IMG/VR virus record: IMGVR_UViG_3300024239_000011
Location: 310,001-374,000 of that record
Strand: one strand, 5' to 3'
DNA: 64,000 bases
Notes under the pieces: model-generated
The model's database searches: none
Told to the model about the DNA's origin: nothing
What the model saw: the letters and a program-made list of their open reading frames with translations, nothing else
Program-made: the position numbers and the translations under genes
In this document: in pieces, positions 13,789-64,000 of the stretch
How the letters are laid out: each line of letters starts with the position of its first letter
How positions within the stretch are numbered: the stretch's first letter is position 1

Positions 13789-14172
13789 ATGGTCAATTTT
13801 GATATGCGCATTCTGGTAGTCGATGACTATGCTACGATGCAGAAGATTGAGCGCAATTTGCTCAAGCAGATTGGTTTCGGGAATGTTGATACCGCAAATG
13901 ACGGCTCCCAGGCACTTCAAATGCTTCGGTTGCAGCACTATGATCTTATCCTGTCCGATTGGAACATGGAGCCGATGACCGGTCTGATGTTGTTGCGCGA
14001 AGTGCGCAATGACCCTGCCCTGAAGCATATCCCATTCATCATGGTAACTGCGGAAACTAAACAGGAAAATGTGATCGCTGCTCGGGAAGCAGGGGTGTCC
14101 AACTATATAATTAAACCCTTTACGGCGGATACATTAAAGAAGAAACTACAGTCGGTTATCGGGGATTTCTAA
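13789..14172 (+). CDS. cheY: Chemotaxis response regulator CheY
   Basis: Single receiver domain: ILVVDD, phosphoacceptor in SDWNMEPM, MVTAE, YIIKPF. GAGG RBS. Confidence 0.92.
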   Translation: MVNFDMRILVVDDYATMQKIERNLLKQIGFGNVDTANDGSQALQMLRLQHYDLILSDWNMEPMTGLMLLREVRNDPALKHIPFIMVTAETKQENVIAAREAGVSNYIIKPFTADTLKKKLQSVIGDF

Positions 14173-14624
14173 TGTTCTCTCGAAAGCGCGATGCGCTTGA
14201 ACTCCTATGCACGTTGTACGTCATTTTTAAACTGGCAAAAACCAAAGGCGACCTCGCCCTTGAGTCGCATTGCGAGCAACCAGAACACAGCCCGATATTT
14301 GTTAATTCCAGCTTGTCAAAAGCAGAAAAGGTCGTACTTGCGGATTCGATGCGACTCTTAACACTCGGGTTAGATAGTCCTGATGATGTGGAACGTTTTA
14401 TGGTCGGTATGTTTGTCATATCCGTCAAACATACCGACAGGATGGATGTGATTATTGAAGCATTTGTGGCACATTGCAAAGGCTATGCACCGCAAATTTC
14501 CATTGAATTTGCTCGTGCCGCGTTCGGTATTAAAAACCGCCCGACTTTTCAGGAAACTGAGGAAGCAATCACTAACCTCCTTCTTGATGATTATCAGTAT
14601 AAATGGCAACATCACGGGAAATAA
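14172..14624 (+). CDS. Soluble MotA-like protein (two cytoplasmic segments fused, no TM helices)
   Basis: LELLCTLY..LALESHCEQPEHSPIF..DSMRLLTLG and GYAPQISIEFAR..RPTFQETEE match the MotA cytoplasmic loop and C-tail. Coupled to cheY. Confidence 0.75.
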   Translation: MFSRKRDALELLCTLYVIFKLAKTKGDLALESHCEQPEHSPIFVNSSLSKAEKVVLADSMRLLTLGLDSPDDVERFMVGMFVISVKHTDRMDVIIEAFVAHCKGYAPQISIEFARAAFGIKNRPTFQETEEAITNLLLDDYQYKWQHHGK

Positions 14625-14701
14625 TCACGCGCATATGTTTCGTCTTTGCGATCTTCACAAACCCGTGCTAAAAATGGCCAAAATGGTTTTGTGAGGTCGA
14701 A

Positions 14702-15268
14702 ATGTTTAAGTGGCTGGGTAGACTGCGATGTGATGTTTCGGCTCAAGAGATTGAGCCGCCCTCGGTGGTAGTATCACCAACCCCAGAGGAATACCTGAAT
14801 CGGGATTTCCCGCCATTGTGTTCGGAATTCAATTCCAGTGGGGAAGTTGAGACGGCACGCACTGCGTGGGTACAATACCAGAATGAAAAACGGCGATCCG
14901 AGCAGCAGCCCGAATTAGACAAACTGATTACTCAAGACAATATCGACCGGGAAGCGGCACAAACCTTCAAACCGAACGTGAAGATCGTTCGGTACGCGGC
15001 TGGTGATTTTCTAGTTTACGAAGGGCAGGAATACCCTCGTAATTTCATTGAGTCCATTGTTATTACCAATCCTGGCGTCGAACCGCAAGTGGTGCAACTT
15101 CACTGGACGATGCGTTTTCCGGGAACATTTGCCGCTGTATTAGTTCCGGCATCAATAACGATGCGTTTGTGTTCGGGGACGGAAATCGTCATTACCTGTA
15201 ACCGGTGGAACGTGGATATTCTTCATAAAGCATTGATTCATGCATGGAAACATGGAGAGCCGGATTGA
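14702..15268 (+). CDS. Hypothetical protein
   Basis: GAGG RBS, ORF tiling. Confidence 0.6.
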   Translation: MFKWLGRLRCDVSAQEIEPPSVVVSPTPEEYLNRDFPPLCSEFNSSGEVETARTAWVQYQNEKRRSEQQPELDKLITQDNIDREAAQTFKPNVKIVRYAAGDFLVYEGQEYPRNFIESIVITNPGVEPQVVQLHWTMRFPGTFAAVLVPASITMRLCSGTEIVITCNRWNVDILHKALIHAWKHGEPD

Positions 15269-15570
15269 ACATTGTGCTGGTTTCATCGGATATGTGGGCA
15301 CGACTGCATGAGGTATTACCATCTCGCGATGCCATCATTATGATAGTGCGCGAGACAATGCAAACTGTTATGAATACCTATTTGTTCGAAATGGTTGATG
15401 AAAACACTCGGCAATCCCTTTCCTTACATATGAGGCGTCAATTGTCCGTTTTACCACTCGAAGATTTCGCAGTGTTTGCTAAATTTCAGGGCAATGGTAT
15501 TACGGTTGATGTCATGGTCAAACACAATGGGGAATGGATTTCGTTCCCCGGTAAGATGGGTACTTGCTGA
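15244..15570 (+). CDS. Small protein resembling the tail sheath C-terminal domain
   Basis: YLFEMVDENTRQSL..LEDFAV..ITVDVMVK resembles gp18-family LFExNDxxTR..DF.V..D(I/V)YVK. Confidence 0.5.
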   Translation: METWRAGLNIVLVSSDMWARLHEVLPSRDAIIMIVRETMQTVMNTYLFEMVDENTRQSLSLHMRRQLSVLPLEDFAVFAKFQGNGITVDVMVKHNGEWISFPGKMGTC

Positions 15571-16013
15571 TGTTTCTTGACCCAACCCCTGAAATTCGGA
15601 AGAAGCATCGATTTGCTTCAAACGAATATTTGTACGATGACAATGTTGTCGTGATTCATGCGGATTGGTTTGGGAACCGTACCATCGAGGTTGTGCGTCC
15701 ACATCACATTCCGACCAGCGATCTTACCGGCTCTGTTGTCGGTTTGTATCAGTGTTTTGCTGTATTACCACCCACCACGGCAACCATTATCGACACGCCA
15801 TTTGGGTTCTGTGTCGAAGACGGGAATCGGTACTACGCATCGGATTTTTACGACAGCAAAACTGATCCCTTGCTGGTGGTCGAGCAAGTTGCCGTGCATG
15901 TGATGGATCAAGCTCGTTGGCACATTACCGAGCGAATTCACGAGGCAGTCCAGTGTATCCTTGCGTTGGTTCCGGAACAATGCGATACTCGGCCAACCGA
16001 ATCTTCCATATGA
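15564..16013 (+). CDS. Hypothetical protein
   Basis: ORF tiling. Confidence 0.55.
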   Translation: MLMFLDPTPEIRKKHRFASNEYLYDDNVVVIHADWFGNRTIEVVRPHHIPTSDLTGSVVGLYQCFAVLPPTTATIIDTPFGFCVEDGNRYYASDFYDSKTDPLLVVEQVAVHVMDQARWHITERIHEAVQCILALVPEQCDTRPTESSI

Positions 16014-26967: not shown

Positions 26968-27732
26968 TCACCATTGAAAATGGTATGTTTTGAAAAACGC
27001 CCGCCAATGTGTGCATTCATTGGCGGCGAAAGTTTCGCGCATGAACAAGTAGTTTCCGGTGGATGTTGATAGGTAATGCGCCGGGGCGTCGAACTGGATG
27101 CCCATGGCGATATCCTCCATTCCTTTGTACAAGACTGAGACGATATTCGTGGGTACACGCTCGTCTTCAATGACATACATACTGTCGTTGATGATAAAGG
27201 AAACCGGTTTCCCACCGAACGAGACATCAGACACGGCACACATAGCACTCGTGGTTCTGCGTTCGAATAAGTCGAGTGCGGTAGCATGATTCATCATGAC
27301 CACATTACCACGACCTCGGCGCGTTTTTGCGGCGCACAAGTTTCCGCCTCGATTTATGATGATGAACGGTGAAACACCATCGCCCCCGCAAAAGGTAAAT
27401 TTTCGCGGTGAATAATAGGCTGTCAGGTCAACTGCCTCTGGGTCAGCCGTGATAAGGCTGATAAAGTATTTCTCTGCTTCAGCTAGATCGGTTACTTTGA
27501 CCCACGTGCCTTTTCCATCAAACGGGCGACACACATCCATGCGCAGTTTGATCGTTGGGCGAGGCGCATCCGGTGCATATGCTTTGGTAATGAACCAAGC
27601 TGTATACTGACGCTCGAATTCGGTTGTCGGATTTGTTGGTGGTTGTGGGTATTCCCGTGGCGTTTGATCTACCATGGTCACCAATGCCGATACCGTGTCT
27701 CCGGTATGGATACCAAGAAATGGATGCTGCAT
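26968..27732 (-). CDS. Truncated, divergent major-capsid (gp23-family)-like protein
   Basis: INRGGNLCAAKTRRGRGNVVMM and VSVLYKG..DA resemble gp23 ANxIAxxTRRGKGN and VGYKG..DAG. Confidence 0.6.
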   Translation of the reverse strand: MQHPFLGIHTGDTVSALVTMVDQTPREYPQPPTNPTTEFERQYTAWFITKAYAPDAPRPTIKLRMDVCRPFDGKGTWVKVTDLAEAEKYFISLITADPEAVDLTAYYSPRKFTFCGGDGVSPFIIINRGGNLCAAKTRRGRGNVVMMNHATALDLFERRTTSAMCAVSDVSFGGKPVSFIINDSMYVIEDERVPTNIVSVLYKGMEDIAMGIQFDAPAHYLSTSTGNYLFMRETFAANECTHWRAFFKTYHFQW

Positions 27733-35800: not shown

Positions 35801-35829
35801 TTGACCTTGTACTCTAAATACGGTACGTT
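35801..35829 (+). promoter_or_regulatory. Overlapping sigma70-type and late promoters of the diguanylate cyclase
   Basis: TTGACC-17-TACGTT with CTAAATA (35814-35820) inside the spacer. Confidence 0.5.
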
Positions 35830-35849: not shown

Positions 35850-37175
35850 GTGTGTAATGTGAATACGCCCGAACTTCTAGCCAAAGCACTTGAATCGCTA
35901 CAGGATGGTGTGATCGTCACCGACGCTTCGCAAACCATAGTGTTCGTCAACGATTCGGTGTTGGCACAGACTGGGTACACCAGGGAGGAAGTGGTTGGAC
36001 AAACCCCCAAACTCTTCCAGTGTCATCAAACAACGGATACCTTTAAAAATTCAATACGCGCTACCCTTGCGCGTGGCGATTCCTTTATTGGGACGACGGT
36101 GAACCGTCGTAAAGACGGTACCACGTATCATGTTGAATTATATGTTGCTCCGATCCACGGGGAGGGTGGGATAACTCATTACGTTGGTACTCAACGCGAT
36201 ATTATCCGCCGAGGCGGAAGACATTTTGAATCATTTTTTGATGTATCCACCCACCTTCTAATTATCCTTGATGTGGATGGTACTCGTATCCGCATAAACA
36301 CCATTAATGCATTGGCAGAGAAATACCTTAATCCAGAATGGTGTACCTGCCGTGGTTTGGATATTTCGTTTCAATGCGCTGGGTTGGAGGAATTCGTCAT
36401 CCATGCCAAATTATGCACGGAGACGTGTGAGGTAACTCGCTTTGAGCAGGTTATCAATACCAATCAGGGTGAGCGCGTTGTTGAGTTCACGTTAGTCCCG
36501 GTAGTTGATGGTAATGGTGTATGTGTCGGTTTGAATTGCGTTGGTGAGGATATCACCAGCGAAAAAGAGGCTTTGGAACATATTCATTTCTTGGCCTACC
36601 ATGACAGCCTTACCGAACTTCCAAACCGCGTCCTCATGACGCAACGCATGAATGCTGAGATTGAACGTTCTCGGCGTTTTGGGCACCCGTTTGCGTTGCT
36701 GTTTCTTGATCTTGATAATTTCAAACAGGTCAACGACACGATGGGTCATGGGGTTGGTGATAAACTTCTCAAAAAGGTTGCGAAGCGTCTTTCTAGTGCT
36801 GTACGCAAGAATGATCTGGTGGCACGATTAGGTGGTGATGAATTCGCTGTCATCATGACAACGGACGGAGATGCTTTAGCTGATGCGGAAACGTTGGCGA
36901 CCCGAATCATTGCCGCATTATCACTACCGTTCGAGGTTGATGAACACCGGATCGATAATATCGGCGTGAGTGTTGGGGTTGCACTATTCCCCAATCATGC
37001 AACTTCGAGAGACGAGTTATTTCGCAACGCCGACATAGCGATGTATCACGCTAAACGCACACACGGAAATTGTCATACCGTTTTTGTAGATGTATTTGGT
37101 GGGTGTAAAAAAGATTGCGAACACTGTGATCTAAAAGTTCGATGCTTCGGAGATAGCTTCGTTCTCACCCCGTAA
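35850..37175 (+). CDS. PAS-PAS-GGDEF diguanylate cyclase
   Basis: PAS motifs (TGYTREEVVGQTP, NRRKDG); HDSLTELPNR, DLDNFKQVNDTMGH, RKND I-site, RLGGDEF. Confidence 0.95.
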   Translation: MCNVNTPELLAKALESLQDGVIVTDASQTIVFVNDSVLAQTGYTREEVVGQTPKLFQCHQTTDTFKNSIRATLARGDSFIGTTVNRRKDGTTYHVELYVAPIHGEGGITHYVGTQRDIIRRGGRHFESFFDVSTHLLIILDVDGTRIRINTINALAEKYLNPEWCTCRGLDISFQCAGLEEFVIHAKLCTETCEVTRFEQVINTNQGERVVEFTLVPVVDGNGVCVGLNCVGEDITSEKEALEHIHFLAYHDSLTELPNRVLMTQRMNAEIERSRRFGHPFALLFLDLDNFKQVNDTMGHGVGDKLLKKVAKRLSSAVRKNDLVARLGGDEFAVIMTTDGDALADAETLATRIIAALSLPFEVDEHRIDNIGVSVGVALFPNHATSRDELFRNADIAMYHAKRTHGNCHTVFVDVFGGCKKDCEHCDLKVRCFGDSFVLTP

Positions 37176-38923: not shown

Positions 38924-39370
38924 ATGTCGAAATTCATTCCATCATTGATTGTTACGTTGTTAGTGTCGTCACCGTCCTACGGTCTGGACATTTCGGGGAA
39001 AATTACAGTTTTGGGGGAATGCCAAGCGACATATGCGCAATTGGTCATGATTTCCAATCTAACTGCCGGTTTCTTAACCATGTCTAATGCACCATCCGAA
39101 CAGGTACTCGGTTTTGCGCGTATTGGGCAGCACGCATTGGATGGGTTTGATCAAGCCGACGCAGAAGCCGAACGAATCATTGGAAATGCATCACCAAAGG
39201 ATCGAATTCGGCTTGATGTGATTAATAATCAAACTTTTCAAGAAACCACCAAGACGTGGGAAGAATTAAAAGTGTCGCTTACCACCGGGGCGTCCACCGC
39301 AACAATGTTCATGAAAAATTTGGTGGAAAAATCAAATCAGTGTGATGGTATATTGTCACAGATCGACTAA
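38924..39370 (+). CDS. Putative secreted protein
   Basis: Signal-peptide-like N-terminus; ATAAATA upstream. Confidence 0.55.
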   Translation: MSKFIPSLIVTLLVSSPSYGLDISGKITVLGECQATYAQLVMISNLTAGFLTMSNAPSEQVLGFARIGQHALDGFDQADAEAERIIGNASPKDRIRLDVINNQTFQETTKTWEELKVSLTTGASTATMFMKNLVEKSNQCDGILSQID

Positions 39371-40308: not shown

Positions 40309-40348
40309 ATATTTCACCTCAATACATGAACATATACATACTGCTGAC

Positions 40349-40377
40349 TTGACATGCGGACAATTATTTTCTATACT
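40349..40377 (+). promoter_or_regulatory. Sigma70-type promoter
   Basis: TTGACA-17-TATACT. Confidence 0.7.
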
Positions 40378-40402
40378 GGTTAAAGTCAAGGAGAAAATCC
40401 CC

Positions 40403-40621
40403 ATGCGTTCAATTACCAAAGCCGACGTGGAACACTATTACGGCGGGATGGTTATGACGATGGCACGTTCGTTGGCAACCAAACCGTGGGATGATTTGAC
40501 TTTTAGATCGCGTCAGCGGCTTTTGAACAAAGCAGTAAAAGCACTTCATGCCATGCTCAATAACAAAGAGTGCGTGAGTGCATTGTTCACGTTTACCAGG
40601 GATCGTCTTACCAATAAGTAG
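40403..40621 (+). CDS. Hypothetical protein
   Basis: Has a promoter, AAGGAG RBS and downstream hairpin. Confidence 0.6.
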   Translation: MRSITKADVEHYYGGMVMTMARSLATKPWDDLTFRSRQRLLNKAVKALHAMLNNKECVSALFTFTRDRLTNK

Positions 40622-44263: not shown

Positions 44264-46681
44264 TTACGCCTCTGCCATCTTCTGGATGGTCGCATAGTCG
44301 GTCTTGCCGGTGCCCAGCAACGGGATGGCATCGACCACCTTGATCACCGCCGGAACCGACAGGGCACTGATGCCCTTACTCTTGGCATCTTCCGCCAAGG
44401 CAGCGCGGTTCGCATCCGGATTGGTCGTGAAGAGGACCAACTGTTCGCCCTTCTTCTCGTCCTTGATAGCGACCACGGCGTGCTGGTGTTGTACCCACAG
44501 CGCCGATACCTGGGTTTCGACGGCGGTCAACGACACCATTTCGCCCGCGATCTTGGCGAACCGCTTGGCACGCCCGCGAATGGTGATGAAACCCTGATCG
44601 TCCAGGCTCACCATGTCGCCGGTATCATACCAGCCATCCTCGGGCTGCTGGATGACGCCGGGGTTGTCCGCCTTGAGATAACCCAGCATGACGTTCGGAC
44701 CCCGGACGATCAGGCGGAAAGCATCCTCGACGCCGGGCACCGTGACCAACTTGTAGTCGATCAGGGGCATCAGGCGCCCAACAGTCCCGGAGCGATAGTG
44801 CATCGGGGTGTTGGTGGCGATGACAGGGGCGCATTCGGTCGCGCCGTAGCCCTCGTAGATCGCCCGCTGGAACTTCTCCATGTAGAGCGCGCGAGTGCTG
44901 TCCTTGACCTTCTCAGCGCCCGCAAAGATGTAGCGGATGCTGCGGAAATCATAGGGGTGCGCTTGCTTGGCGTAGCCGTTCAGGAACGTGTCCGTACCAA
45001 ACATGATGGTCACGTTGCGGTCATAGACCAGTTCCGGGATGACTTTGTAGTTCAAAGGGTTCGGGAACAGGAACACCTTGATGCCATTCAGGAACGGCAA
45101 TAGCGTGCCCGCCGTCAGACCAAAGCTGTGGAACATGGGCAGAGCGTTCAGTACGATGTCCTGCGGCGAGAAATCGACCGAGGCAGCCAACTGGTACATG
45201 TTGGATAGCAGGTTCTTGTGCGACAGTACGACGCCCTTCGGGACGCCCTCCGACCCACTGGTGAAAATCACAACCGCCGGGGTATGCGCGGTCAGGTCTT
45301 CGCTGTCATGCAGACTATACGGGGGACGTGTTGCATCATAGTGAATCGCACGGGCATCGGTATAGTCCAAGAATTTACCACGCAACTTGGCGATCAGCCC
45401 GATATTAGCACCGATATCTTCGAGGTAGACCACGTTGACGCCATTCAGTGAATCGTTCTCACCGTTTTCCAACCCCTTGATCACGTCCTGAAGCTTCGCC
45501 TGTTCAACGAAGAACCGGCTGGTGATCACGGTCTTGATCTCCGCTGCTCGGATTGACGCCTGAATATTGCGCAACCCGGTACTGAAATTCAACATGGCGG
45601 GCACACGACCGAACGCCTGAAGGGCAAAGAACGTTACGGCAGTCTTGATGCTGTTGGGCAGCAAAACACCGATAAATTCACCCTGGTTGGTAAACTGGCT
45701 CAATTGACGACCTAGAACCAGTGTCCCCACAATGAAATTCTTGTAGGTTATCGCGGTGATTTCCTTGGTCGTAGGGTCGATGTTTTCCGCAATCACGGTC
45801 TTTTCGCCGTAGGATGCCGATGCATCAAGCAAACCTTCATACAACGTTTGATCAGCACGATCAGTGGCAGCCATCATGGCAACCATTTCATCGTACAGCC
45901 AATTACCAATGGCAATGCGGCGGGTTTTGCCACGCATCGGTACATGACCCGTACCATCACACCGCTCGCATAGGCGACGGTTGTCACCCGGATACAAACC
46001 AGATGCAAAAATGATATCACCGTCGCCATCGCATACAGGGCATTGCTGCTGCCCGATATTGACCTTACGGGGCGGAAGCATGGTCATTTCGAACGGATGC
46101 CCATAATGTACTGGGTTCCGCCCGCGCAGCCGCGACAATGGCGTGAAATGGACACCTTCCAGACGGATGGGGACAATGTTGGCATCCGCTTTATCCGCGA
46201 TCATACCGGGACCGTCGTAAACCTTCATCAGACCATTGGTGACAGTCAATCGTCCCTCTGGAAAAATCACAACCGGCTTGCCGTCCTTAACCAGATTGAC
46301 GAGCGCCTTGATCGCCATTGGGTTGCGTGTGTCGAGGGTCACACAGTTGAAAAACGGCATAACCAATTGCATCCACCACCACTTCGACGCACCAAGATTA
46401 ACGGCGAACGTCGGGTTCCCCGGAATGTAGGTGGCGAGGATGGCAGCATCCACGAAGCTGACATGATTGGCGATATAGATGACGCGATCCCCGGCGAGTT
46501 TGGCGTTTTCCAGCCCCTTCACCGTGATGTTGTTGTGCAGAGCAAAGACAATACGCAAACCCAGACGAACAAAAGGACCGCCGATTTTCTTCAGCACGGC
46601 AAACCACATGTCGATCATACACCGCAACATGTGGTCGATCATCCAGTTATAGACAGTGTTTTTAATCTCACGATCAGTCAT
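44264..46681 (-). CDS. aas: Bifunctional acyltransferase / acyl-ACP synthetase (Aas-like)
   Basis: PlsC motifs ANHVSFVD and IFPEGR; AMP-binding FTSGSEGVPKG, YEGYGATE, WYDTGD, GKTDY. Confidence 0.92.
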   Translation of the reverse strand: MTDREIKNTVYNWMIDHMLRCMIDMWFAVLKKIGGPFVRLGLRIVFALHNNITVKGLENAKLAGDRVIYIANHVSFVDAAILATYIPGNPTFAVNLGASKWWWMQLVMPFFNCVTLDTRNPMAIKALVNLVKDGKPVVIFPEGRLTVTNGLMKVYDGPGMIADKADANIVPIRLEGVHFTPLSRLRGRNPVHYGHPFEMTMLPPRKVNIGQQQCPVCDGDGDIIFASGLYPGDNRRLCERCDGTGHVPMRGKTRRIAIGNWLYDEMVAMMAATDRADQTLYEGLLDASASYGEKTVIAENIDPTTKEITAITYKNFIVGTLVLGRQLSQFTNQGEFIGVLLPNSIKTAVTFFALQAFGRVPAMLNFSTGLRNIQASIRAAEIKTVITSRFFVEQAKLQDVIKGLENGENDSLNGVNVVYLEDIGANIGLIAKLRGKFLDYTDARAIHYDATRPPYSLHDSEDLTAHTPAVVIFTSGSEGVPKGVVLSHKNLLSNMYQLAASVDFSPQDIVLNALPMFHSFGLTAGTLLPFLNGIKVFLFPNPLNYKVIPELVYDRNVTIMFGTDTFLNGYAKQAHPYDFRSIRYIFAGAEKVKDSTRALYMEKFQRAIYEGYGATECAPVIATNTPMHYRSGTVGRLMPLIDYKLVTVPGVEDAFRLIVRGPNVMLGYLKADNPGVIQQPEDGWYDTGDMVSLDDQGFITIRGRAKRFAKIAGEMVSLTAVETQVSALWVQHQHAVVAIKDEKKGEQLVLFTTNPDANRAALAEDAKSKGISALSVPAVIKVVDAIPLLGTGKTDYATIQKMAEA

Positions 46682-46871
46682 GAAGGCAATCCTGCGGCAG
46701 GTTAAGAGGTGAGTTTTAACGAACACCATCCCAACTAGCAAGACCTTAAATATGGCTTTTGCACTTGTTCCTATGGTAAATAAGGTTCGCCGCTGATGCT
46801 CAAACCACACCATAGGCAGGGCATGGTGGCACCCTCACAACCTCCAAACTACACCAAGCAGGAGAGAGTTT

Positions 46872-47948
46872 ATGTCTGATTTGTTTACAGCGGAAACGCT
46901 GGCAAAATTTGTCAGCAATCAATCGTTTCTCATCATGCTCATTTCGATCATGGTGATTTCCGGGATCATGAAGACCAAGGGTATTCTTGAACCCATCTAT
47001 AGCATTCTCGTGAAGTACATACCGAATCGTCGCGTGCTGTTGAGCATCCTCACGACGATCTATGGTGTCCTTCCGGTCCCGTCCCGTGTTACTGTCACAG
47101 CCGCGTTGCTAGACACCATGGTGGACAAAACCAAGGACAACCGCAAAATGGGTCTGCTGTCGTACATCGCGACCCACCATTACTATCTGTGGAGTCCGCT
47201 TGAAAAAAGCGTGCTGATCTGTATGGCGGGTCTCGGTCTGACATATTCGGCGTTTATCGGCTACATGATCATACCGGTTATCCTTAGCTTCGCAGTCATC
47301 TTTGGCTATATTTTCTGGTGCATCAAGGATGAGGATATCATTGGTTTTCACGTCGATGAAAATGCTCAGATGTCATGGAGCAAGCGCGTCGATTTTCTGC
47401 TATTGACGTTTTTCCTCATTCTTAACGCATGTAGCGTTTTCGCTGATATCAAGCTAGGATCGATAAAAATTAGCGGAATGGCGTGGAGCGCCGCTTTCTT
47501 TGCGATCTATCTGGTGTTCAAACATATCCCGTCGCGTGCTGAACTGGCGTCGTTTGTAAATTGGAAATTGGTCAGCTTCACTGCCCTCGTAATCACAGCC
47601 GGTTGGTTGGTTGGGTTCTATGCCAATTCAATTCAAGATTTTATCAAAGCAAATGCCCAAGGTTATGGGGTATTTGGCGCGTTGATTATCGGCTTTGCTG
47701 CTGCCTTCGCGTTGGGGTCGAGCAGCCGCTATGCCGCGATTGCGGTCATCCTGACCAAGATATTCGGGATGCCTTTCTTCCTGCTGTTCTTCATCGTTGA
47801 ATATGCGGGATACCTACTTAGCCCCACCCATAAGTGCATGGCAATCGGGCAGTTGTACTTCAATACCCGCCTGCGGGATACCTATGCGGTTGTCGGATTT
47901 CTTGTGGTGGTTCTCATCACGTTTGCCACCGTATACACGCTCGTCTAA
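46872..47948 (+). CDS. Multi-TM membrane protein (DUF401 / ion-transporter superfamily-like)
   Basis: About 10 hydrophobic segments; GYLLSPTHKC motif. Confidence 0.65.
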   Translation: MSDLFTAETLAKFVSNQSFLIMLISIMVISGIMKTKGILEPIYSILVKYIPNRRVLLSILTTIYGVLPVPSRVTVTAALLDTMVDKTKDNRKMGLLSYIATHHYYLWSPLEKSVLICMAGLGLTYSAFIGYMIIPVILSFAVIFGYIFWCIKDEDIIGFHVDENAQMSWSKRVDFLLLTFFLILNACSVFADIKLGSIKISGMAWSAAFFAIYLVFKHIPSRAELASFVNWKLVSFTALVITAGWLVGFYANSIQDFIKANAQGYGVFGALIIGFAAAFALGSSSRYAAIAVILTKIFGMPFFLLFFIVEYAGYLLSPTHKCMAIGQLYFNTRLRDTYAVVGFLVVVLITFATVYTLV

Positions 47949-48465: not shown

Positions 48466-48891
48466 ATGTCCATACTTGAAATCAATGACGTTGTTCGGGT
48501 GCAAATGCGCGAGATCATCACCCGTGCGTCAGTGAACCCATATACACAGGCGCAAATTGAGGCATTGATGCGCCTCGGGTCGGCTTCCGGTACTGCCGCC
48601 GACCCTGCGGAAAGAAACAAACTTTTCACTATGACGGTTCCTCACGGGTTTAATGTAACATACACCCATGAGCATCAACCATTTGGTCTTGCACGGCATT
48701 TGTCAGTGAGCGTGCTACGCAAAGGTCGTGTGCCGAATGTTCCCGCTATGGAAATGATCATGCAGGAATTCGGTTTCACATCCGATTTTCAATTGTGTAT
48801 AAACAACGGAACTGTATGGAACGAGAAAATTCCCAACGGAAATTATGCTATCAATGTCATCGAACCAGTTGAAGGATGGGGTGCGGTTTAG
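48466..48891 (+). CDS. Hypothetical protein
   Basis: RHLSVS..GRVP motif; ORF tiling. Confidence 0.6.
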   Translation: MSILEINDVVRVQMREIITRASVNPYTQAQIEALMRLGSASGTAADPAERNKLFTMTVPHGFNVTYTHEHQPFGLARHLSVSVLRKGRVPNVPAMEMIMQEFGFTSDFQLCINNGTVWNEKIPNGNYAINVIEPVEGWGAV

Positions 48892-49241
48892 CTTTCTAGC
48901 CCTTCGGCACATGAAATATTGATCGCGATGAGCGTATCGAGTTTTTCTGGTGTTGGGTTCTCGTAGATTTCCAAGGTTCTACGATCCACGAATGCCGATA
49001 ACCGCAGCAAGTTGGTTCGAAGGTCCGCCGGAAGTGGGCAGTCGTCGGACATCGCATCAGCCTGTACAACCGTCCAGAAACGCTGATTGTACTTTAACGC
49101 ATCGTTGAGGTTGTCGGGGTTCCAGTTATTACGAAGGTCTTGTAATCGCCCAATAGCCGTGCGCAATACACGTGCTTGCACTAGGCGATCACTAGCAAGT
49201 ACCCGATTTGCTTTTTGATATGCGCCGATCCCATTAGACAT
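48888..49241 (-). CDS. flaF: Flagellar biosynthesis regulator FlaF
   Basis: AYQ..ALKYNQRFWT..PLPADLRTNLLRLSAFV..LIAINISCAEGL. Confidence 0.9.
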   Translation of the reverse strand: MSNGIGAYQKANRVLASDRLVQARVLRTAIGRLQDLRNNWNPDNLNDALKYNQRFWTVVQADAMSDDCPLPADLRTNLLRLSAFVDRRTLEIYENPTPEKLDTLIAINISCAEGLES

Positions 49242-49617
49242 TTAGAAGCTCTCCTTCGTACTCGATCAGTTTTTGGCATTCGCGTAGGGCTTTGTAATAC
49301 TGCCCAGCAACAAGATGTTGTTGGATTGCGATAATGAAGGGGTACATAGATGGTGCCGCTTTCATGAGTTCGCCAACGTGATCAAAGAAATCTGTTTGGT
49401 ATTTTTCGATATTGTCCGTGTCTACGTACATCATCTGAATGAACAGGTACGCGACTTTCGATGGGGTGTCGGCGGTTTCAACCGTCAGCACATCTTTCTG
49501 ACGAAGAATTGGCACATCATTGTGGATAGTAATTTCCGTTTTACCGGTTTCAGCACCGGTAATCACGGCGGTACCGACAATGATTTTCTCATTGGGTTTG
49601 AGAACAAGTTTTAGCAT
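49234..49617 (-). CDS. flbT: Flagellin translational regulator FlbT
   Basis: LKLVLKPNEKIIVG..ILRQKDVL..ADTP..YLFIQMMY..YYKALRECQKLIEYE. Confidence 0.92.
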   Translation of the reverse strand: MLKLVLKPNEKIIVGTAVITGAETGKTEITIHNDVPILRQKDVLTVETADTPSKVAYLFIQMMYVDTDNIEKYQTDFFDHVGELMKAAPSMYPFIIAIQQHLVAGQYYKALRECQKLIEYEGELLNV

Positions 49618-49664
49618 TTCATTTGCTCCGCAAGGTCGGGGGTGCCAAAGCACCCCCTATCCTA

Positions 49665-50504
49665 TTAACCGAAAAGACGCAGAACGCCTTGAGCGGACTG
49701 ATTCGCCATGCTCAGCGAGTTAAGAGCAAGCTGGCTACGGGTCTGAAGGGCGAGCAGCTTGGCGCTTTCGTCATTCATGTCCGCATTGGTCAGATCATCG
49801 GCACCAGCACGGTGAGTGGTGATCATGTTCTTGGTGAAATCCGAGCGAATCTTCAGCAAGCTATTGGAGCTACCCAGTGTTGCTGCCGTTGAACGGACGG
49901 TGGACATCGCAGTAGACAAAAGCGCAATGTCGGCATCGATTGCAGCAGTACCAGTTGCCAGGGTCGCATTACCCCAGTCCCCAGCCGCAGTCACCGCCAA
50001 TCCGGTTGCATCACTAGCCGTACCGGTGACAGACATTGATGCGGAACCATCACGATTGAAAGTGACCGTGAGACTGTCCGGGGTACCCTTGATGAGGTTC
50101 ACACCGTCATAGGTAGAGTCCGATGCAATCTTGTCCAACTGAGTACGAAGTGCATCGTACTGAGTTTTGAAAGCAGTGCGGTCAGCCGCAACCGAAGATG
50201 CCTTAGCTTGCTCAGCAAGACCCTTCATTTGTTTCAAAACACCTTCAATGGCGGTTAGACCATCGGTTGCAGTCTTAACGGTATTCATGGCATTGGTAAT
50301 GCCATCCTTTAGAGAAAACAAGTCGTCGGCAGTATCATAGAGATTTTTGGCCCGGAAATAGTTCACCGGGTCATCAATTGCACTGGCAACTCGCTTACCA
50401 GATGCTAAGCGTCCTTGTACGACGCTCATATCACTGTCCGTCCGTTGAAGAGACAGCAGAACATTGCGAACACTTGCATTGAGGGAAATGTTGTCCGTAG
50501 ACAT
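49665..50504 (-). CDS. Flagellin (short alphaproteobacterial type)
   Basis: SVRNVLLSLQ..RLASGKRVASAIDDP, YDGVNL, ADMNDESAKLLALQTRSQL..SMANQSAQGVLRLF. Confidence 0.95.
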   Translation of the reverse strand: MSTDNISLNASVRNVLLSLQRTDSDMSVVQGRLASGKRVASAIDDPVNYFRAKNLYDTADDLFSLKDGITNAMNTVKTATDGLTAIEGVLKQMKGLAEQAKASSVAADRTAFKTQYDALRTQLDKIASDSTYDGVNLIKGTPDSLTVTFNRDGSASMSVTGTASDATGLAVTAAGDWGNATLATGTAAIDADIALLSTAMSTVRSTAATLGSSNSLLKIRSDFTKNMITTHRAGADDLTNADMNDESAKLLALQTRSQLALNSLSMANQSAQGVLRLFG

Positions 50505-56893: not shown

Positions 56894-58156
56894 ATGGAAT
56901 TCACCCCTCTTGAAATTCTCACCATTCTGCTTGGTATTTCGACCGCTTGTTATTCTGCGGTTCGAAAATTCACCAAGCTACCGCTGACCATCGGTATGGT
57001 CATGGCGTCGCTGGCTGCGTCTTACGGGATGATTGGGCTGGAAATGCTATTCCCCGGCTCGGGTATTCGCGCCATGGTCGAGGGCATCATCGGCAGCGGG
57101 AACTTCTCGAAGATCGTACTGGAATTCGCGCTGACCCCGTTGGTCTTTGCTACCGCGATGGAAGTGGACATCGACCAACTCAAGAGCCGGTGGAAATCCG
57201 TGCTGGTGCTTTCCACGGTCAGCGTGCTGATTTCCACCGCACTGTTCGGGATGCTGTTGCCTTCGGCTGCACTGATCGTGGGTAGCTCGATGACCGTGAT
57301 GGGCGCCTTGCTGCTTGGGTCGATGCAGTCGGCAACCGACCCGGTGGCGGTCAACGCGCTGCTGAAGGAACTCCCGTTCGTCCCCGACAGCCTCAAGATC
57401 AAAATTTCTGGTGAAAGCTTGGTCAATGATGGCGTTGCCGTTGTGGTCTACCTCGTCATGCTCTCGATGGCACAAGCTGCGGGAAATGCCGATCTGAGCT
57501 ACAGCCAAGCCGGGTGGTTGTTTGTTCAAGAAGCTGGCGGGGGGCTGGTCATCGGTGGGTTGGTCGCCGCCTTTATTTACCGTTGGACAAAAGCGCATGA
57601 CGAAGGTGAACTGGAATTCCTAATCACGCTGTTCGGTGTTCTGATCCTGATCGTGGTCGGTATCCGTTTGCACGTCAGCGCGCCGCTTGCTGCCCTGGTG
57701 GTGGGGATCGTGATTGGAAATTGGGGTGTTCGTTTCGCCATGAGCGATACCACTCATCAAGTCGTCCACACAGTCTGGCGGGTGATTGACGTAACTCTGA
57801 ATGCGATCCTGTTCACGCTGATCGGCACCGTCGTGATCATCATCAACCATGACGCCAAACATGTGTTGTTCTCAGTTGCCGCAATCGCCGTGTCGCTGGT
57901 GGCGCGGTTTGTATCGGTGGCAATACCGCTCAAACTGCTTGGATGGTTTACCAATGAAAAACCCACCAAAGGTGCGACCCGTGTGTTGACTTGGGGCGGT
58001 TTACGAGGTGGTATTCTGGTGGCGTTGGCGCTGTCATTACCCGACACCATCCCCGGCAAGAGCTACATTCTCGCGGGTGCTTACGGTATCGTTCTATGGA
58101 CCATCATCGTCCAAGGGCTAACCGTGAAATGGCTAATCCTGCGAGTGGTCAAGTAG
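56894..58156 (+). CDS. CPA1-family Na+/H+ antiporter (NhaP-like)
   Basis: SATDPVAV, GESLVNDG, WGGLRG; about 12 TM segments. Confidence 0.92.
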   Translation: MEFTPLEILTILLGISTACYSAVRKFTKLPLTIGMVMASLAASYGMIGLEMLFPGSGIRAMVEGIIGSGNFSKIVLEFALTPLVFATAMEVDIDQLKSRWKSVLVLSTVSVLISTALFGMLLPSAALIVGSSMTVMGALLLGSMQSATDPVAVNALLKELPFVPDSLKIKISGESLVNDGVAVVVYLVMLSMAQAAGNADLSYSQAGWLFVQEAGGGLVIGGLVAAFIYRWTKAHDEGELEFLITLFGVLILIVVGIRLHVSAPLAALVVGIVIGNWGVRFAMSDTTHQVVHTVWRVIDVTLNAILFTLIGTVVIIINHDAKHVLFSVAAIAVSLVARFVSVAIPLKLLGWFTNEKPTKGATRVLTWGGLRGGILVALALSLPDTIPGKSYILAGAYGIVLWTIIVQGLTVKWLILRVVK

Positions 58157-58670: not shown

Positions 58671-59258
58671 TTACGGACGCTTCGAGATCACGTCGTCAAC
58701 CAGACCCAGCGCCTTCGCCTCTTCGGCTGACAGAAACGTATCGCGGTCCAACTTGTCTTCCCATACCTCAAGGGCAACGCCGGTATGTTCGGCATACTTC
58801 TTGGTCAGCTTGTCCTTGATGTTCTGAATTTCCTTCGCCTGGATTTGGATGTCACTACACATACCACCAGCACCACCGGACGGCTGGTGTACCATGACGC
58901 GAGCATTTGGCAGGATGAAACGCTTACCCTTAGCACCAGCCATGAGTAAGAACGAACCCATCGATGCTGCCTGACCAATACACACAGTTGAGACATCCGG
59001 CTTGATGAACTGCATCGTGTCGTAAATGGCAAGACCGGAGGTTACTACACCGCCCGGTGAATTGATGTACATATGAATGTCCGCGTTCGGATCATCACTC
59101 TCCAAGAAAAGAAGCTGGGCACAAACCAGTTCAGCAGTGTGGTCATCAATAGCACCATTGATGAACAGCACTCGTTCTTTCATCAATCTGCTGAAAAGAT
59201 CGTAGCTGCGTTCACCGCGACCACTCTGTTCAACAACAATCGGAACAAGATTCGACAT
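58671..59258 (-). CDS. clpP: ATP-dependent Clp protease proteolytic subunit
   Basis: YDLFSRL, YINSPGG, AASMGS, MVHQP, DRD. Confidence 0.97.
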
Positions 59259-62192: not shown

Positions 62193-62252
62193 GGTGTTCT
62201 CCATAGTCAGGTGGACTTTTAGTTGTCCACCTGACTATTTATACAACTTCCG

Positions 62253-63362
62253 TCAAGCTTCTAATATAAGTTCTTCGTATTTATCAGAAAACCACTCCCA
62301 GTTGCGCATCAAATCCGGCATAAACGGTAGGTTCTCTGACTTCAACGCGATACGTACAGCCAGGATGATCATTTCGCGCTGGAAGTTCTTGTCCACGAAA
62401 GCGAGGAAGTTGTCAGCCATTTCGAACCACGGCGTCAAATCGCTGCGGTCCTGGGCAAGCTTCAACTGCTTCTTCAACTCGTAGCACAGCGAAGTGGTCA
62501 GCGAATACTTCACATCAAGACGGAGATCGGAGGGGATCGTCTTACGTTCACCAGTAAGAATGGTGATGGCGCGCGGTAGCTTGACCGTGTGACGCAGAAC
62601 CGCCATGAAACGCAGGGCGGCGGCATCACCGACGCAACCAGCGATCCACTTCAGAAGGTCTTCGTCCTGCTGGGGCGACATTTCTTCCGTGAATTCTTCG
62701 TCCCACAGCGCCTCGGACACGAACGACCATGTGCGAGGGGTCTGGAAACCACGGCTGGCAGAGCGAGGATTGAACTGGAAAAGATCGTCTTCTTTGGCGC
62801 TCAAATAACCAACCACGTCCGGATGGATGCCGTTTTCATATGCCCACTTCTGCCAATCCGGGAACCAACGCATAAGCTCAAAATGTACCAGACGGTTGGC
62901 AAGGGCGCTCGGCATGCTAACCGCAACAGCGCGGTCAGATTCGCGGTTACCAGCGGCTAGGAGGGCGCAATTCGGCGGGAGGTGGTATTCACCGATCTTG
63001 CGATCCAACACCCACTGTAGCGCCGCGCCCATGACCATCTTCGGGGCAGCGTTGATTTCGTCCAAGAAAATGATTGCGGAGCTATCGGGATCATCCGGCA
63101 ATTCGCTCGGATGTGCGTATTCCATCTTGTTGGTTTTTGGGTTGTAGAACGGAATGCCGCGAAGGTCGCTGGCTTCCTTGAGCAGCAAACGAATATCAAT
63201 GACCGGACGGTTCTGTTCTATTGCAATCTGCTTAACGATATCAGATTTGCCTAGACCCGGCGGACCCCAGATCATAGCAGGACGCTTGAGGCGAATCGAC
63301 TTGCGTAGCTGGCGCTTCAACGCGCTGGGGATAACGCGAAGAGGTTCGTGCGACGTACTCAT
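62253..63362 (-). CDS. MoxR-like AAA+ ATPase
   Basis: WGPPGLGKS, DLRGIP, FLDEIN, AAGNR, ALANR, TPRTW. Typical partner of DUF2201/VWA proteins. Confidence 0.9.
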   Translation of the reverse strand: MSTSHEPLRVIPSALKRQLRKSIRLKRPAMIWGPPGLGKSDIVKQIAIEQNRPVIDIRLLLKEASDLRGIPFYNPKTNKMEYAHPSELPDDPDSSAIIFLDEINAAPKMVMGAALQWVLDRKIGEYHLPPNCALLAAGNRESDRAVAVSMPSALANRLVHFELMRWFPDWQKWAYENGIHPDVVGYLSAKEDDLFQFNPRSASRGFQTPRTWSFVSEALWDEEFTEEMSPQQDEDLLKWIAGCVGDAAALRFMAVLRHTVKLPRAITILTGERKTIPSDLRLDVKYSLTTSLCYELKKQLKLAQDRSDLTPWFEMADNFLAFVDKNFQREMIILAVRIALKSENLPFMPDLMRNWEWFSDKYEELILEA

Positions 63363-63455
63363 TAAAAATCCTTCCACCAAATGCCATGCGGTAAACCCGC
63401 GCAAACAGTTGATGGAGGATCACATAGCCGGTAATCCGGTGTCACTAAACTTTTT

Positions 63456-64000
63456 TTACTTGAATTCGCGCACAAATTCTAAGAAATCATCAGCGGGCAT
63501 CGGGCGTGCAAAGTAATATCCTTGAACAATGCGGACGTTATGCTGACGCATAAAATCAATTTGTGCTTCTGTTTCCACACCTTCTGCAACCATTTCGAGA
63601 TCAAGACTTTTGGCAATGGAAATAATCGCCTCGACTAACTTGGTATTTCCAGAAAGCACTTTATCAACAAACGATTTATCAATCTTCAAAACGTCTAGTG
63701 GAAATTCTGATAGATAGGCAAGGCTAGACCACCCAGTACCAAAATCGTCAATCGCGATGGTAACACCCAACTTACGCAGATGACGCAATACCGTAATGGC
63801 ATTGTGCTGGTTGCTCATAAAACTACTTTCGGTAATTTCCAGTTCAAGATTGGCTGGTGAAATTCCAGTTTCCAACAAGACATCACGAACATTACGTTCA
63901 AGTGAATTATGGACAAACTGTTGCGGTGCAACGTTCACTGCTAATTTAAGATCGATGCCATGTCCAGATAATACTTTGGCAAACTCACACGCTTTCCGCA
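63456..64000 (-). CDS. EAL-domain c-di-GMP phosphodiesterase (5' part outside window)
   Basis: AVNV, LELEITES, IAIDDFGTG, LKIDKSFV, VAEGVET, QGYYFARP. Frame open to the window edge. Confidence 0.93.
   Translation of the reverse strand, partial: RKACEFAKVLSGHGIDLKLAVNVAPQQFVHNSLERNVRDVLLETGISPANLELEITESSFMSNQHNAITVLRHLRKLGVTIAIDDFGTGWSSLAYLSEFPLDVLKIDKSFVDKVLSGNTKLVEAIISIAKSLDLEMVAEGVETEAQIDFMRQHNVRIVQGYYFARPMPADDFLEFVREFK

What the first reader, a model, noticed from the sequence alone, without database searches (positions are those of the whole stretch)
13789..64000. Dispersed motility and c-di-GMP control toolkit in one phage
Seen: CheY with all key residues (13789), mini-MotA (14172), a PAS-PAS-GGDEF cyclase with intact GGDEF and RxxD under overlapping early and late promoter motifs (35850), flagellin-FlbT-FlaF (48888-50504), an EAL phosphodiesterase (63456-end) and an NhaP antiporter. 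The genes are at separate loci, implying repeated independent acquisition. Inference: the phage controls switch bias, torque, filament and the motile-sessile messenger of its host.
Basis: partly seen in the sequence, partly recalled or inferred. Interest (0 to 1): 0.72.

Follow-up and report, generated by a model that had tools for sequence, protein, structure and literature searches.

The report
Megaphage encodes flagellar motor control kit
A giant uncultured phage of Magnetospirillum-like bacteria carries its own copies of the cytoplasmic parts of the bacterial flagellar motor (FliG, FliM, FliN, CheY, a membrane-less fragment of the stator protein MotA, a flagellin with its regulators, and two c-di-GMP enzymes), which I found reported for no other virus and which suggests the phage takes over its host's swimming from the inside.

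Summary
The record is a T4-type megaphage (gp23 capsid, 66 tRNAs, 543 kb, and a fragment of an 870-kb contig).

The kit is larger than reported. Outside the window the same genome encodes a full FliG, FliM fused to a PopZ-like N-terminus, two FliN, a second CheY and a membrane-anchored FliG_C domain. No membrane or export parts, CheA/W, MCP, CheZ or PilZ were found in the 543 kb.

FliG, FliM and CheY are 73-80% identical to Magnetospirillum proteins but have phage-like codon composition, so they are old, selected residents.

Mini-MotA is the stator's FliG-contacting domain with all four TM helices excised. It belongs to an undescribed soluble family that sat beside FliG_C genes in all four bacterial contexts checked.

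"Repeated independent acquisition" is not supported: the genes come in blocks, and a related phage contig shares two of them.

Most likely the phage controls the motor from the cytoplasmic side, with late-promoter genes acting as a brake. This function is inferred, not shown.

The parts
13755..13762 (+). Late-type promoter motif CTAAATAA, 34 nt upstream of cheY
   Evidence: The motif class NTAAATAN is 10-15x enriched upstream of genes and peaks at -45 to -20. Of 10 motif-bearing genes scanned, 5 hit PHROGs with a named function, and 4 of those 5 are structural.
13789..14172 (+). CheY, 127 aa, with all phospho-acceptor and switch residues
   Evidence: Pfam 4e-28 and NCBIfam CheY 1.4e-45. It is 73% identical to the Magnetospirillum sp. 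UT-4 CheY that lies next to cheZ.
14172..14624 (+). Mini-MotA (p150): a soluble MotA cytoplasmic domain. The TM2-TM3 loop (the torque-generating interface) is fused to the C-terminal tail, and there is no TM helix. Its start codon overlaps the cheY stop.
   Evidence: TIGR03818 at 1.4e-17 in 2 stretches. Two-stretch matches to full MotAs against one-stretch matches to about 25 soluble clusters. No TM by hydropathy. Alignment A1 shows the excision. AF2 pLDDT is 90.8, and the top six structural matches are all MotA/PomA at Z 8.8-11.8.
35801..35829 (+). Overlapping promoter motifs before the cyclase: TTGACC-N17-TACGTT (host/early type) containing CTAAATAC (late type, 35814-35821)
   Evidence: Sequence. 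Both motif classes are positionally enriched genome-wide.
35850..37175 (+). PAS(-PAS)-GGDEF diguanylate cyclase, 441 aa, with intact GGDEF and RxxD I-site
   Evidence: The PAS domain resembles LOV domains but lacks the NCRFLQ cysteine (read from the sequence).
48888..49241 (-). FlaF (flagellin secretion chaperone family), overlapping the flbT stop by 8 nt
   Evidence: PF07309 at 8.5e-27. 45% identical to the copy on related contig L010.
49234..49617 (-). FlbT (flagellin mRNA translational regulator family); the ATG at 49617 is preferred over the GTG at 49653
   Evidence: PF07378 at 4.7e-37. 55-59% identical to the L010 copy, depending on the stretch aligned.
49638..49657 (-). Inverted repeat GGGGGTGC-TTT-GGCACCCCC between the flagellin stop and the flbT start
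   Evidence: Read from the sequence printed; not tested further.
49665..50504 (-). Short flagellin (279 aa, N and C helical domains only)
   Evidence: Flagellin_N 6.5e-18 and Flagellin_C 1.8e-9. 36-49% identical to Magnetospirillaceae flagellins, one of which is followed by flaF. 62% identical to the L010 copy.
56894..58156 (+). CPA1 Na+/H+ antiporter (NhaP-like); its link to motility is unproven
   Evidence: PF00999 at 7.9e-52 and TIGR00831 at 7.6e-35.
63456..64000 (-). 3' part of a TM-GGDEF-EAL gene (the full ORF runs to window position 64871; 471 aa)
   Evidence: EAL 4.4e-67 and GGDEF 7.2e-40.

Best explanation
The window lies in a T4-type megaphage whose host is a Magnetospirillum-like member of the Rhodospirillales. 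The phage has long carried host-derived genes for every soluble, cytoplasm-facing part of the flagellar motor and its control.

The gene set:
- FliG, FliM and two FliN (the rotor/switch ring).
- Two CheY.
- A flagellin with FlbT and FlaF.
- Two derived 'half-interface' proteins: a soluble MotA torque-interface domain (mini-MotA) and a membrane-anchored FliG C-domain.
- A PAS-GGDEF cyclase and a TM-GGDEF-EAL enzyme.

Proposed mechanism (inferred): the phage takes control of the motor from the cytoplasmic side, in two stages.

Early stage. Genes behind host-type promoters are the fliM-fliN-fliN operon and the cyclase. They feed phage-made subunits into a switch ring that is known to remodel.

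Late stage. Genes behind late-type promoters are fliG, cheY-miniMotA and again the cyclase. They uncouple and stop the motor in four ways:
- Mini-MotA occupies the FliG torque helix in place of real stators.
- The anchored FliG_C, and a FliG whose FliF-docking domain has diverged, titrate stators and FliM.
- Excess CheY fixes the switch bias.
- c-di-GMP rises.

Flagellin plus FlbT could, as in Caulobacter, co-repress translation of host flagellin mRNAs.

What is shown: gene identities, intact motifs, host affinity, long residence, the two promoter classes, and the MotA fold of mini-MotA. What is inferred: all binding events, the timing, and the direction of the effect on swimming.
For: Identity of the parts.

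Only soluble parts were found. There was no hit for the MotA_ExbB TM domain, MotB plug, FliF, FlhA, rod/hook proteins, CheW/CheA, MCP, CheZ or PilZ.

Host affinity:
- FliG is 80% identical to Magnetospirillum FliG and falls, on a long branch, inside the Magnetospirillum/Telmatospirillum/Phaeospirillum group.
- CheY is 73% identical and FliM 76%.

Purifying selection after long residence: GC3 is 0.38-0.68 like the phage (0.52 +/- 0.09), against 0.78-0.94 for host fliG.

Functional motifs kept:
- The CheY catalytic set.
- The FliM LNQDEIDSLL CheY-P site and its GG motif.
- The FliG EYPQ motif and torque-helix charges R285, E292, D293 and R301.
- Mini-MotA K23 and E31 at the positions of E. coli MotA R90 and E98. 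Those residues contact FliG D288/D289 and R281 (PMC12505986).

Link between soluble MotA domains and FliG_C: 4 of 4 bacterial family members checked are adjacent to a FliG_C gene. An ESM Atlas cluster carrying FliG_C matches the mini-MotA fold at TM 0.72.

The phage FliG keeps its M domain (91-92%) and C domain (83-85%) but not its N domain (57-64%). Host-host pairs keep N at 76-83%.

Promoter classes.

Conservation in a second phage-like contig.

Literature:
- The FlbT/FljJ/FlaF mechanism is described in PMC7591256.
- Adaptive remodelling of the C-ring is stated in the abstract of PMC10128058, as listed.
Against: - No expression or phenotype data exist. Only DNA runs from subsurface metagenomes hold the sequence.
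- The one complex prediction (mini-MotA plus FliG 190-338) gave no answer, with score 0.00.
- Intact, highly conserved FliG, FliM and FliN fit simple replacement or maintenance at least as well as sabotage.
- 'Late' is assigned only by motif analogy to T4 and by the structural genes that share the motif.
- The record is incomplete, so the parts reported missing may lie in the roughly 326 kb not seen.
- The host is inferred from protein similarity only.
Confidence: 0.45

Rival explanations
1. Pure maintenance ('auxiliary motility genes'). As cyanophages carry psbA, the phage resupplies turnover-prone motor parts so that the infected cell keeps swimming. These parts are FliM, FliN, FliG, CheY and flagellin with its chaperone. 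The cell then holds its place in the oxic-anoxic gradient during a long infection while host expression is shut off. Mini-MotA and the anchored FliG_C would be assembly or regulatory helpers.
For: - FliG, FliM and CheY are 73-80% identical to the host proteins with all interfaces intact.
- Only soluble, cytoplasm-facing parts are encoded, of the kind that could exchange into an existing motor.
- The C-ring is reported to remodel adaptively (PMC10128058 abstract).
- FlaF is a secretion chaperone needed to export flagellin (PMC7591256).
Against: - A TM-less stator domain cannot deliver torque, and should compete with real stators.
- The anchored FliG_C has lost two torque-helix charges (R to H, E/D to Y).
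- fliG and cheY carry late-type rather than early-type promoters.
- The FliF-docking domain of FliG is the one that has diverged.
Confidence: 0.25
2. Pure shutdown by decoys throughout infection. All products act as dominant-negative or titrating copies that paralyse the flagellum. The benefit would be saving proton-motive force and protein synthesis, or excluding flagellum-dependent superinfecting phages.
For: - Mini-MotA and the anchored FliG_C look like decoys.
- FlbT with a flagellin is a known translational co-repressor pair.
- The cyclase has an intact active site.
- No phosphatase or kinase accompanies CheY.
Against: A decoy needs one interface only. Yet FliG keeps both its FliM-binding and stator-binding domains, FliM keeps the CheY site and the FliG-binding motif, and two FliN genes are kept. 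A GGDEF-EAL enzyme with an intact EAL argues for two-way control of c-di-GMP.
Confidence: 0.17
3. The proteins are repurposed for a phage structure or a polar scaffold unrelated to swimming. For example, a FliG/FliM/FliN assembly could be targeted by the PopZ-like N-terminus of phage FliM and bound by mini-MotA.
For: - The phage FliM ORF carries an N-terminal extension with EPTMEDILTSIRRVL and DDIDAMF motifs. These match the N-terminus of the single DUF2497 (PopZ-type) protein of each host genome at E 4e-6 to 2e-3.
- A related motif is present in the tail of mini-MotA homologue P0040.
- Bacterial soluble-MotA/FliG_C pairs lie outside flagellar clusters.
Against: CheY, flagellin, FlbT and FlaF have no obvious role outside the flagellum. 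The conserved residues are exactly those of the motor interfaces.
Confidence: 0.1
4. Artefact or dead cargo: host DNA mis-assembled into a viral contig, or decaying passenger genes.
For: The genome comes from a metagenome assembly, and the record is a fragment.
Against: - The same gene neighbourhoods recur in independent assemblies from several samples.
- GC3 is phage-like.
- Phage promoter motifs precede the genes.
- The ORFs and catalytic motifs are intact.
- The genes are flanked by ORFans and homing endonucleases.
Confidence: 0.03

Closest known systems
Flagellar stator protein MotA/PomA (e.g. PDB 8gqy, 6ykm, 8ucs)
   Same: Mini-MotA has the fold and sequence of the cytoplasmic torque-generating interface plus the C-terminal tail. 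It keeps the K/R and E residues that contact FliG.
   Different: All four TM helices and the ion channel are absent. There is no MotB partner in the record. It cannot be a stator.
Motor brakes and clutches that act at the FliG-MotA interface (YcgR, EpsE, MotI)
   Same: The proposed point of action is the same rotor-stator contact (YcgR literature: PMC10140304).
   Different: Those proteins are PilZ or glycosyltransferase-type proteins. No PilZ was found here. The candidate inhibitor here is a copy of one side of the interface itself.
Caulobacter FljJ-FlbT-FlaF flagellin control module
   Same: The same three families sit in one operon-like block. FlbT plus a regulatory flagellin represses flagellin translation, and FlaF is the export chaperone.
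   Different: Here the module is encoded by a virus. Whether the phage flagellin is regulatory or structural is unknown. It is only 36-49% identical to host flagellins.
Phage auxiliary genes that replace turnover-prone host components (e.g. cyanophage psbA; from general knowledge)
   Same: These are host-derived genes under purifying selection, ameliorated to phage composition, and encoding parts of a host machine.
   Different: The machine here is a motility organelle and its signalling, not metabolism. Truncated derivative proteins are included.
T4-type jumbo phages of Alphaproteobacteria (e.g. Agrobacterium phage Atu_ph07; recalled from memory, not tested)
   Same: A gp23-type capsid, a T4-like late promoter motif, many tRNAs, T4 RNA ligase and homing endonucleases.
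   Different: There is no nucleotide similarity to any of 50,697 phage records. No flagellar genes are mentioned for jumbo phages in two recent surveys.

Membership tests
CheY (single-domain chemotaxis response regulator) | Receiver fold with D12/D13/D57 acid pocket, T87, Y106 and K109; about 130 aa with no output domain | tested here: met
   73% identical to the host CheY next to cheZ.
CheY (single-domain chemotaxis response regulator) | Phosphorylation by CheA and binding to FliM | not testable with these tools
   No CheA/CheW or CheZ in the 543-kb record. The FliM CheY-binding motif is present in both phage and host.
MotA flagellar stator subunit | Four TM helices forming the ion channel with MotB | tested here: not met
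   Maximum hydropathy is 0.99 with no TM segment. There is no MotA_ExbB domain and no MotB plug in the record.
MotA flagellar stator subunit | Cytoplasmic torque-generating interface with conserved charged residues (E. coli R90, E98) | tested here: met
   TIGR03818 positions 71-148 are matched. K23 and E31 are conserved. MotA chains match the model at Z 8.8-11.8.
Soluble MotA-cytoplasmic-domain family (undescribed; defined here) | 150-240 aa, one continuous match spanning the MotA loop plus tail, no TM helix | tested here: met
   There are two supported clades, and p150 lies in clade S2 with P0002, P0003 and P0040.
Soluble MotA-cytoplasmic-domain family (undescribed; defined here) | Adjacent FliG_C-domain gene | tested here: not met
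   This holds for 4 of 4 bacterial-context members. It does not hold for p150 or the phage-type members. The phage's two FliG_C genes lie 17 kb and 172 kb away.
FliG / FliM / FliN switch complex | FliG N+M+C domains with EHPQR-type motif and charged torque helix; FliM with N-terminal CheY-P peptide and FliM domain; FliN SpoA domain | tested here: met
Flagellin | Conserved N- and C-terminal helical (D0/D1) domains | tested here: met
   Ability to polymerise was not testable.
GGDEF diguanylate cyclase | GG(D/E)EF active site; optional RxxD I-site | tested here: met
   The cyclase has RKND-x5-GGDEF. The hybrid enzyme has GGDEF without RxxD.
EAL phosphodiesterase | EAL, DDFGTG, EGVE and QG(Y) catalytic motifs | tested here: met
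   EAL domain 4.4e-67.
T4-type (gp23 capsid) tailed phage | gp23-family major capsid protein; large terminase | tested here: met
   Gp23 at 4.6e-81. Terminase_6C is absent from the 543-kb record. A called gene with a Terminase_6N hit lies just beyond its end on the 870-kb contig.

The most novel reading that the evidence does not exclude
A virus encodes a complete, host-compatible flagellar switch complex plus mimics of both sides of the rotor-stator interface. It uses them to rebuild, re-target (through a PopZ-N-terminus/FliM chimera) and then brake the host motor. The soluble MotA domain would be the founding, characterisable member of a widespread, undescribed class of proteins that bind FliG_C.
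Probability: 0.3. Interest if true: 0.92.

Novelty: new variant of a known kind. Interest (0 to 1): 0.85.

Why it matters
Phages are known to use flagella as receptors and to carry metabolic auxiliary genes. A phage that carries the rotor/switch proteins, CheY, a stator-interface mimic and c-di-GMP enzymes would show that host behaviour (swimming, taxis, settling) is itself a target of viral reprogramming.

The work also yields two handles for motor biology:
- A naturally soluble MotA torque-interface domain, with conserved FliG_C neighbours in bacteria. The weak stator-rotor contact has been hard to study biochemically, and this could make it tractable.
- A natural experiment: a FliG whose FliF-docking domain has drifted while its FliM and stator faces are held.

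Separately, the genome appears to be part of an 870-kb contig. If that contig is real, it would, as far as I recall, exceed the largest published phage genomes.

Tried and rejected
- Nucleotide searches of the phage collection, near and distant: no match.
- PDB sequence search with mini-MotA: nothing. Plain Foldseek against PDB: only weak MotA hits at E about 0.5-1. VIA-align was needed to see the match.
- IMG/VR viral contigs scanned with mini-MotA, FlbT, the mini-MotA alignment A3, the FliG alignment A4 and the FlbT alignment A5: no relatives besides the window's own record. A2 was too diverse to use. The JGI metagenome scan with A5 returned only the source contig.
- Homologue search with the FliG_C-only protein: only itself.
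- Complex prediction of mini-MotA with FliG 190-338: no answer, not evidence either way.
- The 870-kb ENA record is not held, so it could not be searched. One exact-protein look-up failed on start-codon choice.
- No RNA runs hold the sequence.
- LOV photoreceptor reading of the cyclase's PAS domain: rejected, because the adduct-forming cysteine motif is absent.
- Idea that mini-MotA is a recent truncation of host motA: rejected. It is only 45-57% identical to host MotA, it belongs to soluble clade S2, and the hosts lack soluble copies.
- Idea that the anchored FliG_C comes from the bacterial mini-MotA partner family: rejected. It is 26% identical to that family, against 43% to the phage's own FliG.
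- Neighbours of cheY-miniMotA: no Pfam hits.
- Literature searches for phage-encoded C-ring genes or soluble MotA: nothing found.

Full report
**Setting**

The window is bases 310001-374000 of a single 543,035-bp contig (48.7% GC) with 66 tRNA genes, nearly all clustered at 77-172 kb. The tools class it as an IMG/VR virus record. It has a T4-type gp23 capsid gene (E 4.6e-81).

The window itself holds the following phage-type content:
- a virion structural protein, a tail-fibre-like protein and five tandem radical-SAM genes;
- GIY-YIG and HNH homing endonucleases;
- thymidylate synthase, T4-type RNA ligase and ClpP;
- a VWA-metallopeptidase/AAA pair, and many ORFans.

There is no nucleotide match in 50,697 phage records.

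**Checking the observation**

All named genes are present with strong scores.

- CheY (13789-14172) matches the CheY equivalog at 1.4e-45. It carries D12, D13, D57, T87, Y106 and K109 in E. coli register.
- The cyclase (35850-37175) has PAS plus GGDEF with an RKND-x5-GGDEF I-site.
- Flagellin, FlbT and FlaF (48888-50504, minus strand) form a tight block. The preferred FlbT start is the ATG at 49617.
- The antiporter (56894-58156) is a CPA1 exchanger.
- The 'EAL' gene is really a 471-aa ORF that runs 871 bases past the window end. It has an N-terminal TM helix, an intact GGDEF without an I-site, and a complete set of EAL motifs.

**Mini-MotA**

The 150-aa product of 14172-14624 has no Pfam hit. 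It matches the MotA equivalog TIGR03818 at 1.4e-17 in two pieces.

An exhaustive phmmer search of 1.8 billion representatives gave two kinds of match:
- Full-length MotAs (285-295 aa) match in two stretches: query 5-78 to MotA 71-150, and query 93-135 to MotA 241-283.
- About 25 clusters of 150-240-aa proteins match in one continuous stretch.

These short proteins start with Met and have no hydrophobic segment, whereas the full MotAs show four. The alignment shows clean excision of TM1-2 and TM3-4.

K23 and E31 occupy the positions of E. coli MotA R90 and E98. The literature gives those residues as the contacts to FliG D288/D289 and R281 (PMC12505986).

An AlphaFold model (pLDDT 90.8) has six MotA/PomA stator chains as its top structural matches, at Z 8.8-11.8 over 100-109 residues. 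They include the FliG-bound stator 8ucs. The next unrelated chain scores 6.6.

It is the stator's torque-generating interface plus C-terminal tail, made soluble. It cannot conduct ions or anchor to the wall.

**The soluble family and its link to FliG_C**

In a tree, the soluble proteins form at least two supported clades, S1 (99/95) and S2 (100/97). The phage protein sits in S2 with three other members from phage-like or ORFan-rich contigs.

All four bacterial-context members I looked up lie directly next to a gene with a FliG_C domain. An ESM Atlas cluster of 278-aa FliG_C proteins matches the mini-MotA fold at TM 0.72.

Five Magnetospirillaceae genomes have only the full-length MotA, at 45-57% identity to the phage protein.

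This is guilt-by-association evidence that the soluble domain works with a FliG C-domain. My one complex prediction gave no answer. I found no paper describing such proteins.

**The full inventory**

- A complete FliG (N, M and C domains, 338 aa) lies 2.3 kb before the window, at genome 306724-307740.
- A 177-aa protein with an N-terminal TM helix and a FliG_C domain lies at 151814-152347.
- FliM and two FliN genes lie at 68291-70186.
- A second CheY lies at 127374-127820, with a truncated CheY remnant beside it.

Not found at E <= 0.1 in the 543 kb:
- MotA TM domain, MotB plug, FliF, FlhA and rod/hook proteins;
- CheW/CheA, MCP and CheZ;
- PilZ and the PopZ C-domain.

Within the 543 kb, then, only the soluble or cytoplasm-facing components were found.

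**Host and age of the genes**

Similarity to the presumed host:
- Phage FliG is 80% identical to Magnetospirillum FliG. It joins the Magnetospirillum/Telmatospirillum/Phaeospirillum group on a long branch (0.62, against a median of 0.02).
- CheY is 73% identical to the host CheY that sits beside cheZ.
- FliM is 76% identical.
- Flagellin is only 36-49% identical.

GC3 of all kit genes (0.38-0.68) matches the phage (0.52 +/- 0.09), not host fliG (0.78-0.94). These are old, ameliorated residents kept by selection.

A different phage-like 38-kb contig shares several genes with this phage:
- flagellin, 62% identical;
- FlbT, 56%;
- FlaF, 45%;
- mini-MotA, 45%;
- an Apyc1-like gene, 62%.

In one host genome the best-matching flagellin is followed by flaF, so the trio probably arrived as one block. 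'Repeated independent acquisition' is therefore not what the data show.

**Telling details**

- Phage FliG keeps its FliM-binding M domain (91-92%) and its stator-binding C domain (83-85%). Its FliF-docking N domain has fallen to 57-64%. Host-host pairs at similar overall distance keep N at 76-83%.
- The anchored FliG_C is 43% identical to the phage FliG C-domain. It has lost two torque-helix charges (R285 to H, E292 to Y).
- The FliM ORF has a phage-specific N-terminal extension with the motifs EPTMEDILTSIRRVL and DDIDAMF. These match the N-terminus of the single DUF2497 (PopZ-type) protein in each host genome.
- A second short motif, LMxEWxAM, is shared by host and phage FliM N-termini and by the tails of several phage-type mini-MotAs. 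I cannot explain either motif.

**Promoters**

An NTAAATAN motif is 10-15-fold enriched upstream of genes. It sits 20-45 nt before 76-90 of the 776 heuristically called starts. Of ten motif-bearing genes scanned, five hit PHROGs with a named function. Four of those are structural (head-tail adaptor, baseplate/virion, tail fibre) and one is a homing endonuclease. The tail-fibre-like gene in the window also carries the motif. This fits a T4-like late promoter.

The motif lies 34-36 nt before cheY (and so before mini-MotA), fliG and the cyclase.

A TTGAC-N17-19-TANNNT motif is concentrated 41-80 nt upstream of starts: 29 in one bin against 1.9 expected. It precedes the fliM operon and the cyclase.

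The timing itself remains inference.

**Interpretation**

The conserved interfaces argue that the phage FliG, FliM, FliN and CheY still engage host partners. The two truncated proteins look like competitors for the two faces of the rotor-stator contact. FlbT with a flagellin is a known translational co-repressor pair, and FlaF is the export chaperone (PMC7591256).

I favour staged control: the switch ring is supplied early, and the motor is uncoupled and c-di-GMP signalling shifted late (0.45). The rivals are pure maintenance (0.25), pure decoy shutdown (0.17), a non-motility scaffold (0.10) and artefact (0.03).

Independent assemblies from several samples carry the same neighbourhoods. That makes mis-assembly unlikely.

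**Caveat on completeness**

The record is labelled 100% complete, but an 869,618-bp ENA contig says otherwise.
- It is 100% identical over the record's first 12.7 kb. It then continues for 8 kb of phage-like genes, including a called gene with a Terminase_6N hit. Apart from two short stretches (83 and about 190 bases), that continuation does not match the record, and it does not match its other end.
- fliG and cheY-miniMotA lie on that contig at the same spacing.
- By collinearity, about 326 kb remain unseen. 'Not found' therefore applies only to the 543 kb.

The sequence comes from subsurface metagenomes, and no RNA data were available.

Noticed in passing
genome 1-12736 and beyond (outside the window); locus L124: The 543-kb record is a fragment. 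ENA contig k141_178484 (869,618 bp) is identical over its first 12.7 kb, then continues into 8 kb of phage-like genes (a gene with a Terminase_6N hit, DUF7487, a T7-kinase-like gene). That continuation does not match the record's other end. If the contig is real, the genome is at least 870 kb, which as far as I recall exceeds any published phage genome.
   Followed up: partly
window 4483-10890 (+): Five consecutive radical-SAM genes (phrog_1802, E 1e-25 to 1e-38), directly after virion and tail-fibre-like genes. The substrate is unknown.
   Followed up: no
genome 68291-69661 (locus L024:8291-9661): The FliM ORF carries a phage-specific N-terminal extension. It mimics the N-terminus of the host DUF2497 (PopZ-type) protein with the motifs EPTMEDILTSIRRVL and DDIDAMF. 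A similar motif sits in the tail of mini-MotA homologue P0040.
   Followed up: partly
genome 68291-69661; proteins P0002, P0040, P0042, P0046: The short motif LMxEWxAM occurs twice before the CheY-binding peptide in host and phage FliM. It occurs again at the C-terminal tails of phage-type soluble MotA domains. The partner is unknown.
   Followed up: no
genome 308085-308828 (-) and window 58671-59258 (-): An arginyl/leucyl-tRNA-protein transferase (ATE_N/ATE_C) lies next to fliG, and a ClpP lies in the window. Both are parts of an N-degron protein-degradation route, which is unusual in a phage.
   Followed up: no
genome 286666-301632 (-): A single 4,988-aa open reading frame lies just upstream of the fliG region.
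   Followed up: no
window 44264-46813 (-), 39367-40419 (-), 46872-47948 (+): Envelope-related host-like genes: an Aas-type acyl-ACP synthetase/lysophospholipid acyltransferase (982 bits to PRK06814), a KdsD/KpsF arabinose-5-phosphate isomerase, and a TIGR00529-like membrane protein. Aas and NhaP have the highest GC3 of the genes checked (0.68-0.70).
   Followed up: no
genome 456893-457786 (+): A gene 62% identical to the Apyc1-type (anti-Pycsar) metallo-beta-lactamase-fold gene of related contig L010. It is a probable counter-defence nuclease for cyclic nucleotides.
   Followed up: no
genome-wide; e.g. window 13755-13762 and 35814-35821: Two promoter classes can be read from the sequence. One is a T4-late-like NTAAATAN motif 20-45 nt before 76-90 genes. 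The other is TTGAC-N17-19-TANNNT 41-80 nt before about 46 genes.
   Followed up: yes
genome 127839-128039 (-): A 66-aa remnant of the C-terminal half of a CheY-type receiver lies directly beside the second cheY. It looks like the trace of a duplication or of decay.
   Followed up: no
window 27097-27366 (-): A weak gp23-like match (E 9.7e-4) lies inside the 254-aa ORF 26968-27732, which has no Pfam hit. It may be a diverged capsid-fold paralogue.
   Followed up: no
window 49638-49657 (-): A GC-rich inverted repeat (8-bp stems, 4-nt loop) lies between the flagellin stop and the flbT start. It could set the ratio of flagellin to FlbT/FlaF.
   Followed up: no
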